Shown here piece by piece: positions 13,101 to 15,632 of a stretch of DNA of 39,301 bases. The notes beneath the pieces are model-generated. The model had not been told where the DNA came from. It saw nothing but the letters and a program-made list of their open reading frames with translations, and did no database searches. The stretch comes from Polymyxa betae A26-41 (Eukaryota; Protista; Endomyxa: Phytomyxea). Each line of letters begins with the position of its first letter. Positions within the stretch are counted from its first letter, which is position 1. Location of the stretch: NCBI GenBank assembly GCA_003693705.1, contig RBZT01000649.1, positions 1 to 39,301 on the forward strand, in the 5' to 3' direction. The translations under genes and the position numbers were made by a program.

Positions 13101-14432
13101 TATCTGTAAGCAAGGAAAGCGTCAATCAGGCTGCTTGGACAAGAAACAGAAAGATAAAATCTGATAGCTTATATGTTGGATACAAGGTACAATGTTCGCC
13201 GAAATCTGAGTCGTTTGCCAACCTCATCTGATTACGAGAAGCATTTAGCCTGGCTATAAGCGCCAACCATTCGAGCACAGCGTTCAGACAGTCGGGACCT
13301 CCAATGAAAATTTTGTTGATAACCTAAGAGAGGCGAAATCAACAAGCATTGAACAACTGAAGGATCCAGGCGAACTGATATCAAACATATCAAAAAGAAA
13401 AATGAGAAAGGTGTAGCAGACCTGATGGACATTTGTGACCAGAAGATTGAAGGTCGAAGCGACTTCGTTCGACCACTGATCAACAAATCCCTGAGTCTGT
13501 TGCTTGATGTTCTGCAAGGGCGGCCATGACAACGACAGAATCCGCCCAAGGAGAGTCTGAGCGACAGCCGTGGCACCCGTCATACCAGGAACTTGCACAA
13601 CCTATAAGCGAGGCGTTAGACATCAACGCAATCAATAAAAGCAGCAGAATAATCCATCAAACAAAACCGAAAATGATTGACAACGGTTAAGGAATGGAAA
13701 GCTGAAATGAAGACGTTAAACGAAACAGTACGACTTTGAAAAATCGGCTTTCAACGAAGAACGGAATGGCGCCCTTCATGTCCAGGAATTGACGAAGAGT
13801 ACGAAGCGGCAGCAGAGCATCGTCCATACGTCGGCACTCATTAGTCTTGGTCTCGATCTGCTCAAGGATGCTCTGAAACAGAGCCTGTGCCATGCTTGCA
13901 TCTTGGTCTTCATCGATCATTAGCTTCAGAAAATTCGGCGGAAGCGCTCGGTTTCGTTTCGGATCTGCAGACAGCAATAAGATGAAGGCCTGCACCGACT
14001 TCTCGGAAGCCTGCGCGCTTAAGACTCCAGGGCTGAGCAGCAAGACAGAAAAAGCTGCCAGGCGGGAGCATAATGTCTAAGGAAACTTTAGAAATTGGAA
14101 AAGCAAAGTTTCATGGACGAAAAGTTGACAAAGATTAGTTTAGCTATTGATACCAAAAATGGAAAAAGCGAAACCTGAGCAAGATTAGAATCAGGAATTG
14201 AAGCAGCTTTCTCATAGGCGCGAACGATGTAATCGAAATGGGTTCGTTGGGTGGAGAACCCGGGCAGCTGAAGCCTTTCAAGGAGGATGATATCCAACAG
14301 ATCCACCGAAAGCTGATTATTCTGTGAAGCAAATTCGGGCAGATAGGTAGGCGAAGGTCGCGACGTCGGCGTCAGGGACACATCCAGAATTTCAGCTATG
14401 ACTTCATGCTCATCTTTGGAGATGGAACCCAT
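10121..14432 (-). CDS. UFD2: Ubiquitin conjugation factor E4 (UFD2/UBE4), U-box protein, many exons
   Basis: C-terminal U-box VPDEFLDPIM..LMQDPVILPMSRQIMDRAVIERHLL..DPFNRQPL; core motifs LKNPHLRG, VDRMAQMLDYYLVVLVGP and DGRSYKPALF. Confidence 0.93.
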
Positions 14433-14646
14433 TAGAAAGTCAGCAACGATCAAAAGCAGATAAAGGTCGGATGAGAGCGTCAGAGCGCTCTGCTGCGCAA
14501 CAAAAAACATTTTAGCCGTTCAGTAATTACAGTAACAAGTTTTTATTATTTGGCACTGCGCAAAAAAGTGCAAAATCGGCAGTCTGTAACTGCGCAACTG
14601 TTTGAACCATCATCCAGATTATGTTCATTTTCAAACCGATTCAGCC

Positions 14647-15632
14647 ATGAGGTCGTTGTCGTGGATGCGACCTTGCCTGCGAGCTCTTCCGCAATTACAA
14701 GGGCGGGTTCATTACGTTGGATTTCGCCCATCAGTTCGGTTGATGCCAATATGGCGTCAAGGGATGACACAGCGCTGGTTCGCCAAATCGTCGTCGTCGA
14801 AGCAGGCGGAAATCAAAGTGCCATCGCTGGGCGATTCCATCACTGAGGGCGAAGTCGTGGAAATCTCAAAGCAAGTTGGGAATTATATCAATATCGATGA
14901 TGTTGTTGCTGTCCTTGAAACTGACAAGGTTATCCAGATTGATGTCGCTGACCTTGAGTTTGTTTGCTACTTTCCTTTGATTGTGCCAAGCTTTGATTTC
15001 ATCAAGTGCTAGAACTTTTTTTGATTGTTTTGTTGCGATTTTTGTCTAATTTTTTAAAATTTGAAGAAAAATCCTGAAAGAAGCAATTTCATTTATGCTG
15101 TTTTACAATGCATTTATAAGTAATCGTGTTACTGCTATAGGTCAGCGTGGATATTCGCTCAGAGCATTCTGGCACCATAACTAGTGTCAAATATGAACCT
15201 GGAAACACTGTTAAGATCGGCGATGTGCTGTTCACCCTCGATACCGACCCAGATTCAGTCTCCAGGCCGCATCCAGTGTCACCCCCTCCTCCAGATTCCA
15301 ATGCCGCTAAACTCACTCATGTTGCGAAAGCTGCTGAGACTCCTGCTGAGACTCCTTTGGAGCCGAAACCTTCAGCTGGTATCCCTGCCGCTCTTCCTTT
15401 TGCTGAGTCGGCGTCATCGTCTTCTTACGCGCCCTCAATCCAGTTCCGATATGGAGTTCGGGAGACCGCTGTTTCAACATCACAAAGGTTTGAATCTGCA
15501 GGAAGCGACGCGTCGCCAGCGGATGCACCCTGGGTGCCGACTCCGGAACGATATCGACGCCCGCGTGTCTCACAAGCAGAGATTGATGCTATTGAATCTG
15601 GCGGCGCCACTTTCAGGTCAATGTTTGCCTGA
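14647..15632 (+). CDS. Mitochondrial lipoyl-domain protein fused to a KGD4/MRPS36-like C-terminus, without acyltransferase domain (exons 14647-14928 and 15141-15632, 257 aa)
   Basis: Arg/Ser-rich presequence; IKVPSLGDSITEG..VAVLETDK|VSVDIRSEHSGTI..VKIGDVLFTL lipoyl domain; Pro/Ala linker; PSIQFRYG and PERYRRPRVSQAEIDAIESGGA motifs just before the stop. Confidence 0.85.

What the first reader, a model, noticed from the sequence alone, without database searches (positions are those of the whole stretch)
14647..15632. Lipoyl domain fused to a KGD4/MRPS36-like module: a candidate E3BP-like adaptor for 2-oxoglutarate dehydrogenase
Seen: a complete 2-exon gene encoding a presequence, an E2o-type lipoyl domain with intact lipoyl-Lys (ETDK|VSVD), a Pro/Ala linker, then PSIQFRYG (15432) and PERYRRPRVSQAEIDAIESGGA (15543-15608) and a stop. 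There is no succinyltransferase domain. Known: yeast Kgd4 and mammalian MRPS36 are small lipoyl-less adaptors that recruit E3 to the OGDH core; they have a P-x-I-x-F motif and a C-terminal PxRxRR..I/LSxxEIxxIxxGG motif, and their E2o lacks the peripheral-subunit-binding domain. Inference: this adaptor carries its own swinging lipoyl arm, paralleling E3BP/protein X in pyruvate dehydrogenase. It may be an intermediate showing KGD4 arising from a duplicated E2o that lost its catalytic core. Pipelines would probably label it a truncated DLST. I cannot confirm whether this architecture has been reported before.
Basis: partly seen in the sequence, partly recalled or inferred. Interest (0 to 1): 0.85.

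Follow-up and report, generated by a model that had tools for sequence, protein, structure and literature searches.

The report
Lipoyl-domain-bearing Kgd4/MRPS36 adaptor gene
This two-exon gene encodes a mitochondrial protein that joins a lipoic-acid-carrying "swinging arm" domain to the small adaptor (Kgd4/MRPS36) that ties the E3 enzyme to the 2-oxoglutarate dehydrogenase complex; the combination is a conserved family in many protists and algae that I could not find described in the literature.

Summary
Exon 1 (14647-14928) encodes a presequence and the first half of a lipoyl domain, ending on the lipoyl-lysine codon. A 212-nt GT..AG intron follows. Exon 2 (15141-15632) encodes the rest of the lipoyl domain, a Pro/Ala/Ser linker and a complete Kgd4/MRPS36 module with both conserved motifs.

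Homology to Kgd4 is solid:
- Pfam PF10937 scores above its cut-off on the last 70 residues.
- 21 of 34 relatives hit PF10937.
- A profile of the tail finds fungal "ribosomal protein S36/YMR-31" at about 1e-10, and hhalign gives 99.3%.

It is a family, not a one-off. At least 59 fetched proteins share the architecture, from Spongospora, Pythium/Globisporangium, Nannochloropsis, Heterosigma and Eimeria. Atlas leads point to diatoms, green algae and haptophytes.

The genome encodes a separate full-length E2o with its own lipoyl domain and no E3-binding domain, plus E1o and E3. It has no second Kgd4 module, and this contig carries no acyltransferase domain.

Most likely this is the organism's only Kgd4: an E3-recruiting adaptor with its own lipoyl arm, analogous to E3BP. 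Function is inferred, not shown. The idea that Kgd4 arose from a truncated E2o is untested. No paper describing the fusion was found.

The parts
14647..14808 (+). Start codon and putative mitochondrial presequence (residues 1-54)
   Evidence: First ATG of the frame. The 54 residues hold 10 Arg/Lys, 0 Asp/Glu and 8 Ser/Thr. Orthologues have variable N-terminal extensions before the lipoyl domain. Targeting is inferred from composition only.
14809..14928 (+). First half of the lipoyl domain, ending on the lipoyl-lysine codon (14926-14928, ETDK)
   Evidence: PF00364 profile positions 2-40, 32.4 bits. TIGR01347 sucB is the best NCBIfam hit. GDSITEG and ETDK are near-invariant in the family.
14929..15140 (+). 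Intron, 212 nt, phase 0, GT..AG
   Evidence: Donor AAG|GTTATC and acceptor ...CTATAG|GTC. GC is 31% against 53% in the exons, and there are in-frame stops. Removing it restores ETDKVSVD as in orthologues. No RNA reads could be laid.
15141..15239 (+). Second half of the lipoyl domain
   Evidence: PF00364 profile positions 42-73, 22.3 bits. It aligns to the orthologue's lipoyl domain, which AlphaFold2 models at pLDDT above 90 (P0001 residues 55-130). Foldseek matches lipoyl domains and E2o.
15246..15425 (+). Pro/Ala/Ser-rich flexible linker (about 60 residues)
   Evidence: Low-complexity segment, variable in length and sequence across the family. The equivalent stretch of the orthologue is predicted disordered, pLDDT about 50.
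15426..15461 (+). Kgd4 N-terminal motif (YAPSIQFRYGVR). It is homologous to the region of Kgd4/MRPS36 that contacts E3.
   Evidence: Pro, Ile and Phe are invariant in 34 of 34 family members. Fungal Kgd4 has RTPLIKFLGKR at its mature N-terminus. The N-terminal part of Kgd4/MRPS36 binds E3 (PMC4214781, PMC9974300).
15462..15542 (+). Variable spacer between the two Kgd4 motifs
   Evidence: Poorly conserved, with variable length, in family and fungal alignments.
15543..15608 (+). Kgd4 C-terminal motif, running from PERYRR through SQAEIDAIESGGA. It is homologous to the region that docks on the E2o/E1o core.
   Evidence: PF10937 profile positions 93-116, 25.2 bits. hhalign against fungal Kgd4 gives probability 99.3%, E 3.5e-20. 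The orthologue has a predicted short helix here at pLDDT 82-86. The C-terminal part of Kgd4/MRPS36 binds the core.
15630..15632 (+). Stop codon (TGA), 7 residues after the GGA motif
   Evidence: Most orthologues end 0-12 residues after the GG(A) motif (Eimeria and a few others run longer). There is no PF00198 match anywhere on this contig.

Best explanation
The gene encodes the organism's only Kgd4/MRPS36 orthologue, in a form that carries an N-terminal E2o-type lipoyl domain.

Proposed mechanism:
1. The presequence directs the protein into mitochondria.
2. [quoted passage not shown]
3. The P-x-I-x-F-R-x-G motif holds the E3 (dihydrolipoamide dehydrogenase) dimer. This replaces the peripheral-subunit-binding domain that the E2o of this genome lacks.
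4. The lipoyl domain is lipoylated on the Lys encoded at 14926-14928. It sits on a flexible linker of about 60 residues and acts as an extra swinging arm next to the tethered E3. This parallels the lipoyl domain of E3BP/protein X in pyruvate dehydrogenase.

Shown here: the gene structure, both domains and both motifs, family-wide conservation, and the genomic context of the complex.
Inferred by homology: mitochondrial import, E3 and core binding, lipoylation and catalytic use of the arm.
For: - Domain calls: lipoyl domain and PF10937 on the exons.
- Family: 50 exhaustive phmmer hits, most aligned end to end with the same architecture. 59 fetched proteins have the lipoyl Lys plus the tail motifs and no DHRxxDG. 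P, I and F are invariant and GDSITEG/ETDK near-invariant.
- Kgd4 homology: 21 of 34 members hit PF10937, best E 5.3e-9. The tail profile finds fungal 'Ribosomal protein S36/YMR-31' proteins at 6e-11 to 1e-9 in 5.8 billion sequences. hhalign gives 99.3%, E 3.5e-20. Fungal Kgd4 shows the same two motifs.
- Genome context: E2o on C976 has its own lipoyl domain, a Pro/Ala/Lys linker and a catalytic domain with DHR. PF02817 is found only at the E2p, E2b and E3BP-like loci, not at E2o. E1o and E3 are present. This is the single Kgd4 module in 27 Mb.
- Lipoyl domain type: the best hits outside the family are eukaryotic E2o proteins at 45-58% identity, and sucB is the top NCBIfam model.
- Fold: the orthologue model shows a confident lipoyl barrel, a disordered linker and a C-terminal helix, with no other domain.
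- Literature: Kgd4 N-terminus binds E3 and its C-terminus binds the core (PMC4214781; PMC9974300). Kgd4 is already called E3BPo for this role (PMC10203282).
- Transcripts: complete ORFs from transcriptome assemblies of other species carry the fusion (P0053 TRINITY, P0044 TSA).
Against:
- There is no biochemical evidence of lipoylation, import or binding in any family member.
- PF10937 on the whole of exon 2 scores 21.8 bits, just under the cut-off of 22. Only the isolated tail passes.
- 13 of 34 relatives do not reach E<=0.01 for PF10937, for example the oomycete and Eimeria forms whose tails have diverged.
- The mammalian cryo-EM study did not see Kgd4 in OGDHc at all, so even the adaptor model has critics (PMC11436768).
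- The lipoyl domain could be structural rather than catalytic.
Confidence: 0.75

Rival explanations
1. The protein is a working Kgd4-type adaptor, but its lipoyl domain is not a catalytic arm. It would serve as a structural anchor that parks on E3 or E1o, as a regulatory or redox-sensing module, or as a sink for lipoylation, without carrying succinyl groups.
For: The Chaetomium OGDHc study proposes that surplus, unloaded lipoyl domains act as anchors (PMC10203282). The genome's E2o already has its own lipoyl domain. Opisthokont Kgd4 works without one.
Against: The lipoyl Lys and the surrounding GDSITEG...ETDKVSVD signature are near-invariant across distant phyla and as well kept as in true E2o. 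That points to selection on cofactor attachment and on recognition by E1o.
Confidence: 0.17
2. The protein serves a different or additional 2-oxoacid dehydrogenase complex, for example a 2-oxoadipate dehydrogenase that shares E2o, rather than the TCA-cycle OGDHc.
For: A second E1o-like gene lies on contig C613. Adaptor specificity is inferred only from fungal and animal Kgd4.
Against: The lipoyl domain is closest to E2o. E2p and E2b in this genome keep their own E3-binding domains and need no adaptor. A complex that shares E2o would use the same adaptor, so this is an extension rather than an alternative.
Confidence: 0.04
3. It is a decaying or functionless truncated DLST paralogue, and the Kgd4-like tail is a chance resemblance.
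For: Automatic pipelines name relatives 'E2 component' or 'DLST, partial'. The tail is short and lies next to low-complexity sequence.
Against: The frame is intact and both motifs are conserved in dozens of sequences from several phyla. The profile matches to fungal Kgd4 are highly significant. No remnant of a catalytic domain lies downstream, and the tail shows no similarity to E2o.
Confidence: 0.02
4. It is a gene-model or assembly artefact: the lipoyl half and the Kgd4 half belong to two separate genes.
For: The splice was not verified with reads.
Against: The lipoyl domain itself spans the intron, and its second half lies in the same open frame as the Kgd4 module. Orthologues encode the whole architecture in one uninterrupted ORF on genomic contigs (P0005 on L015, P0087 on L012-L014) and in transcript assemblies.
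Confidence: 0.02

Closest known systems
Kgd4 (yeast Ymr31) / MRPS36, the fourth subunit ('E4', 'E3BPo') of the mitochondrial 2-oxoglutarate dehydrogenase complex, Pfam PF10937
   Same: Both conserved motifs are present in the same order: R-x-P-x-I-x-F-(R/L)-x-G-K-R near the start of the module, and P-x-(R)-(Y/F)-x-R-x-x-x-S-x-x-E-I-E-A-I-x-S-G-G-A at the C-terminus. The Pfam score passes the cut-off on the tail, hhalign gives 99.3%, and this is the only such module in the genome. The presumed role is the same: tether E3 to an E2o that has no PSBD.
   Different: It carries an N-terminal lipoyl domain and a linker of about 60 residues, which the described fungal and animal proteins (about 100-135 aa) lack. 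The papers read here describe Kgd4 homologues in fungi and animals or 'eukaryotes' and do not mention a lipoyl-bearing form.
E3-binding protein (E3BP, protein X) of the eukaryotic pyruvate dehydrogenase complex
   Same: The logic is the same: a non-catalytic subunit that carries its own lipoyl domain on a flexible linker, binds E3 and is anchored in the E2 core.
   Different: The binding parts are not homologous. No PSBD (PF02817) appears in any of the 34 members, and there is no E2-like core domain. The lipoyl domain is E2o-like rather than E2p-like. This genome appears to have a separate E3BP-like E2p paralogue on contig C259.
Dihydrolipoyllysine-residue succinyltransferase (E2o, DLST, SucB)
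   Same: The lipoyl domain is closest to E2o lipoyl domains (45-58% identity to eukaryotic E2o; sucB is the best NCBIfam model). It shares the signature GDSITEG...ETDKVSVD with the genome's own E2o.
   Different: It has no acyltransferase domain and no DHRxxDG motif. The region after the lipoyl domain has no detectable similarity to E2o.

Membership tests
Kgd4/MRPS36 (PF10937) | Match to the family profile at or above Pfam's gathering score (22 bits) | tested here: met
   The last 70 aa score 25.2 bits. The whole of exon 2 scores 21.8 bits, marginally below the cut-off. The six-frame genome search gives 20.9 bits, or 22.3 with neighbours. 21 of 34 relatives match at E<=0.01, best 5.3e-9.
Kgd4/MRPS36 (PF10937) | Conserved C-terminal core-binding motif ending in S-G-G-A | tested here: met
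   hhalign of the family tail profile against 13 fungal Kgd4 sequences gives probability 99.3%, E 3.5e-20 over this motif. The motif is visible in alignments A2 and A3.
Kgd4/MRPS36 (PF10937) | Conserved N-terminal P-x-I-x-F-x-G-K-R motif (E3-binding half) | tested here: met
   P98, I100 and F102 of exon 2 are invariant in 34 of 34. Fungal Kgd4 shows R-T-P-L-I-K-F-L-G-K-R, with I, F, G, K and R invariant. hhalign reported only the C-terminal block, so this motif rests on alignment by eye.
Kgd4/MRPS36 (PF10937) | Small single-module protein (about 100-135 aa) with no other domain | tested here: not met
   A lipoyl domain and linker precede the module, giving 257 aa from the two exons. This is the difference that makes it a variant.
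Kgd4/MRPS36 (PF10937) | Physical binding to E3 and to the E1o-E2o core; mitochondrial matrix location | not testable with these tools
   Only a presequence-like N-terminus supports location (10 basic and 0 acidic residues in 54). No multimer prediction or experiment was available.
Lipoyl domain (PF00364) of 2-oxoacid dehydrogenase E2 type | Biotin_lipoyl fold with the modifiable Lys in the E-T-D-K hairpin | tested here: met
   Profile positions 2-40 and 42-73 lie on the two exons, at 32.4 and 22.3 bits. The orthologue model has pLDDT above 90 for the barrel, and Foldseek hits lipoyl domains. Actual lipoylation was not tested.
E2o / DLST (succinyltransferase) | C-terminal 2-oxoacid_dh catalytic domain (PF00198) with DHRxxDG | tested here: not met
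   There is no PF00198 match on contig C873. The four such loci lie on other contigs. The stop follows 7 residues after GGA. Family members lack DHRxxDG.
E3BP / protein X of PDC | Peripheral-subunit (E3) binding domain PF02817 and an E2-like inner core domain | tested here: not met
   PF02817 is absent from the hit list of all 34 members at E<=0.01. In this genome it is found only on C375 and C683, and weakly on C259. It is an analogue, not a member.

The most novel reading that the evidence does not exclude
The lipoyl-bearing form is the ancestral eukaryotic fourth subunit of OGDHc. On this reading the complex of early eukaryotes, having lost the PSBD from E2o, used an E3BP-like lipoylated adaptor built with an E2o-derived lipoyl domain. 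The small Kgd4/MRPS36 of fungi and animals would then be a secondarily reduced version that lost the arm. In most eukaryotic lineages outside opisthokonts, OGDHc would therefore have two kinds of lipoyl carrier.
Probability: 0.3. Interest if true: 0.75.

Novelty: new variant of a known kind. Interest (0 to 1): 0.6.

Why it matters
Kgd4/MRPS36 is treated in the literature as a small, lipoyl-less adaptor of fungi and animals. How E3 is held on a PSBD-less E2o is still debated, and MRPS36 variants cause Leigh syndrome.

A conserved form that carries its own E2o-type lipoyl domain, and is the only Kgd4 in its genome, does three things:
- It extends the adaptor well beyond opisthokonts.
- It gives OGDHc a true counterpart of E3BP.
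- It offers a natural experiment on what an extra swinging arm placed next to E3 does to the complex.

It also corrects a systematic mis-annotation, in which these proteins are labelled 'E2 component' or 'DLST, partial'. And it gives tractable systems (diatoms, Nannochloropsis, oomycetes, coccidia) a testable fourth subunit.

Tried and rejected
1. The search for homologous proteins with exon 2 found nothing, because of its word prefilter. The exhaustive phmmer search then found the family.
2. PDB sequence searches with exon 2 and with the tail profile found no solved Kgd4/MRPS36 chain, only lipoyl or biotinyl domains and a chance hit.
3. The lipoyl-domain tree (49 rows, 77 columns) did not resolve whether the family's lipoyl domains form one clade or where they sit relative to E2o. 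It needs 6 label changes, none forced by supported branches. No evolutionary direction can be drawn from it.
4. The test of 'truncated E2o' was hhalign of the tail profile against 21 full-length E2o sequences. It gave probability 0.08%, so there is no residual similarity.
The runs holding 59-71% of the words are of unknown library type and cannot tell DNA from RNA.
6. The look-up of encoding contigs and the listing of cluster members gave mostly unnamed metagenome contigs. The family's taxonomic range therefore rests on a handful of named members plus ESM Atlas cluster labels, which are leads only.
7. Seven literature searches found no description of a lipoyl-Kgd4 fusion. The library lacks most subscription journals, so prior description cannot be excluded.
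8. The exons were searched separately by reference. The full-length Spongospora orthologue P0001 stood in for the fold and the tree. In one search the two exons' DNA was pooled only to count G+C.

Full report
**1. The observation**

The region was read directly and the two exons were translated separately.

- An ATG at 14647 opens a 94-codon exon that ends ...ETDK at 14928.
- The next bases are GTTATC. At 15140 a pyrimidine-rich stretch ends in TAG.
- Exon 2 starts at 15141 with VSVD and runs 163 codons to TGA at 15630-15632.
- The intron is 212 nt, with 31% G+C against 53% for the exons, and it contains in-frame stops.
- Reading through the donor would give ...ETDKVIQIDVADLEF... and a stop, which destroys the domain.

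Pfam places Biotin_lipoyl profile positions 2-40 on exon 1 (32.4 bits) and 42-73 at the start of exon 2 (22.3 bits). Kgd4-YMR31 (PF10937) lies at the end of exon 2, scoring 25.2 bits on the last 70 residues against a cut-off of 22, and 21.8 bits on the whole exon.

The first 54 residues have 10 basic and no acidic residues, as a mitochondrial presequence would. No predictor was available, so targeting is an inference.

The exons were searched by reference, and a full-length orthologue was used wherever a whole protein was needed.

**2. It is a family**

A word-indexed search with exon 2 found nothing. An exhaustive phmmer search over 1.84 billion cluster representatives gave 50 hits at E<=1e-3. 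Most are 170-290 residues long, are aligned over query positions 1 to about 156, and end at their own C-terminus.

Their sequences show the same order of parts:
- a variable N-terminal extension;
- a lipoyl domain with GDSITEG and ETDKVSVD;
- a Pro/Ala/Ser-rich linker;
- a block P-x-I-x-F-R-x-G-K-R;
- a variable spacer;
- a C-terminal block ending S-G-G-A.

Pro, Ile and Phe of the first block are invariant in 34 of 34 sequences. Among all proteins fetched, 59 have the lipoyl Lys plus the tail pattern and lack the catalytic DHRxxDG, and 50 others are true E2o.

Named members come from:
- Spongospora subterranea (Rhizaria; the closest relative, 43% identity to exon 2);
- Pythium oligandrum, P. 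insidiosum, 'P.' brassicae and Globisporangium ultimum (oomycetes);
- Heterosigma akashiwo and Nannochloropsis salina (ochrophytes);
- Eimeria magna and E. flavescens (Apicomplexa).

The ESM Atlas puts the orthologue next to two eukaryotic clusters. One is mostly Bacillariophyta (154 members, 20% with PF10937). The other is mostly Chlorophyta (60 members). A haptophyte cluster scores lower. These are leads, not proof.

Complete ORFs from transcriptome assemblies (P0053, P0044) and uninterrupted genomic ORFs (P0005 on L015, P0087 on L012-L014) carry the whole architecture. The fusion is therefore not a modelling artefact.

From the best hit and the 27-Mb genome, the window's organism is probably a plasmodiophorid. 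This was not verified.

**3. Homology of the tail to Kgd4/MRPS36**

- 21 of the 34 aligned members hit PF10937 at E<=0.01, best 5.3e-9.
- A profile of the tails alone (A2, 84 positions) was searched against 5.8 billion proteins. It retrieved fungal proteins named 'Ribosomal protein S36, mitochondrial' or 'YMR-31' at 6e-11 to 1e-9.
- Thirteen of these fungal proteins align with R-T-P-L-I-K-F-L-G-K-R at the mature N-terminus and E-L-P-x-R-F-x-R-...-E-E-I-E-A-I-E-S-G-G-A-S at the C-terminus.
- The stramenopile fused forms even share P-L-I-K-F-L-G-K-R-S letter for letter.
- hhalign of A2 against the fungal alignment gives 99.3% probability, E 3.5e-20, over the C-terminal block.

According to Heublein et al. 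2014, the N-terminal part of Kgd4 binds E3 and the C-terminal part binds the Kgd1-Kgd2 core (PMC4214781). Cross-linking in mammals agrees (PMC9974300). The Chaetomium study renamed the protein E3BPo (PMC10203282).

**4. Genomic context**

The window is the whole of contig C873 in a 27.1-Mb, 1001-contig assembly. PF00198 catalytic domains occur at four loci, none of them on C873.

| Contig | Gene | Evidence |
|---|---|---|
| C976 | E2o | Lipoyl domain (76.9 bits), Pro/Ala/Lys linker, catalytic exons ending in DHRIIDG |
| C375 | E2p-like | |
| C683 | E2b-like | |
| C259 | E2p paralogue | Catalytic motif reads DRR, as in an E3BP-like protein |
| C966 | E1o | A second E1o-like gene lies on C613 |
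| C68 | E3 | 580 bits |

The E3-binding domain PF02817 is found at C375 and C683, and weakly at C259, but not at the E2o locus. PF10937 and the family tail profile each find exactly one place in the genome, and it is this gene.

The organism therefore has a complete OGDHc gene set, an E2o that cannot bind E3 through a PSBD, and a single Kgd4, which is the lipoyl-bearing one.

**5. The lipoyl domain**

Outside the family, the best matches of the orthologue are eukaryotic E2o proteins at 45-58% identity over the lipoyl domain. The top NCBIfam model is sucB. Its lead over the E. coli-type E2p model is small for the full-length orthologue (78.9 versus 74.7 bits) and about 5 bits for exon 1 (34.2 versus 29.3).

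AlphaFold2 on the Spongospora orthologue, with a 35-sequence alignment, gives:
- a confident barrel (residues 55-130, pLDDT above 90);
- a disordered linker;
- a short C-terminal helix (232-239, pLDDT 82-86);
- no other domain.

Foldseek matches E2o and isolated lipoyl domains.

A maximum-likelihood tree of 49 lipoyl domains is unresolved. The tail profile has no similarity to any part of E2o beyond the lipoyl domain. The lipoyl domain is therefore E2o-like. Three scenarios remain open:
- the protein arose from a whole-gene E2o duplicate;
- a copied lipoyl domain fused to a pre-existing Kgd4;
- opisthokonts lost the domain.

**6. Mechanism and confidence**

I consider it near certain (about 0.95) that this is a real gene for a lipoyl-domain plus Kgd4 protein. 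It is likely (about 0.75) that it works as the E3 adaptor of OGDHc with a functional lipoyl arm.

The main rival (about 0.17) is that it is an adaptor whose lipoyl domain is structural or regulatory. Pseudogene, artefact and other-complex readings are unlikely, for the reasons given under rivals.

**7. Novelty**

The papers read here describe Kgd4/MRPS36 in fungi and animals or 'eukaryotes' as a small adaptor, and none mentions a lipoyl-bearing form. Seven full-text searches, including searches for the Pfam name, found nothing on such a fusion.

Automatic annotation already records the co-occurrence of PF00364 and PF10937 on some members, and names others E2 components. The sequences are therefore public, but the architecture appears uninterpreted.

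I class it as a new variant of a known kind, of moderate to good interest. The caveat is that subscription literature was not searchable.

**8. Limits**

- The taxonomic range rests on few named sequences.
- All functional statements are by homology.

Noticed in passing
G000:C259 about 44800-47320 (L010 2204-3820): This is an E2p-like paralogue with a lipoyl domain, a weak PSBD match (17.9 bits) and a catalytic-domain motif that reads DRR instead of DHR. It looks like an E3BP (protein X)-like inactive subunit of pyruvate dehydrogenase in this protist.
   Followed up: partly
G000:C613 118761-119252 (minus strand): A second, more divergent E1o-like gene sits here (OxoGdeHyase_C, 40.9 and 32.4 bits) besides the main E1o on C966. 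It may be a 2-oxoadipate dehydrogenase-type E1 that would share E2o and this adaptor.
   Followed up: no
window 15465-15596 (last 70 aa, residues 16-59): There is a weak match to Pfam LEA_3a (PF03242, E 0.0058, 17.5 bits, below the cut-off), over the stretch around W-V-P-T-P-E-R-Y-R-R-P. No other family member showed it at E<=0.01, so it is probably chance. Plant LEA_3 proteins are mitochondrial, so it may still be worth a look.
   Followed up: partly
proteins P0168, P0169, P0176, P0185, P0192, P0198: Many metagenome 'proteins' of 120-150 aa are exon fragments of the same family that begin inside the second half of the lipoyl domain. Other lineages therefore also have introns within the lipoyl domain, but at positions different from the Lys-codon boundary seen here.
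   Followed up: no
proteins P0133 and P0151: Two NCBI gene models of a Globisporangium-like oomycete, named 'DLST ... partial', are mis-modelled versions of this family. One retains intron sequence inside ETDK...VSVD. The other skips part of the lipoyl domain and reads through the stop into 140 unrelated residues.
   Followed up: no
proteins P0135 and P0138 (Eimeria): The coccidian members are much longer (377-405 aa). They have a long N-terminal extension, a diverged first motif (P-x-I-L-F-R-S) and a C-terminal extension after the GG motif.
   Followed up: no
window 14088-14646: A divergently oriented ORF (14088-14510, minus strand) starts only 136 nt upstream of this gene's ATG, so the two genes probably share a short bidirectional promoter.
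   Followed up: no
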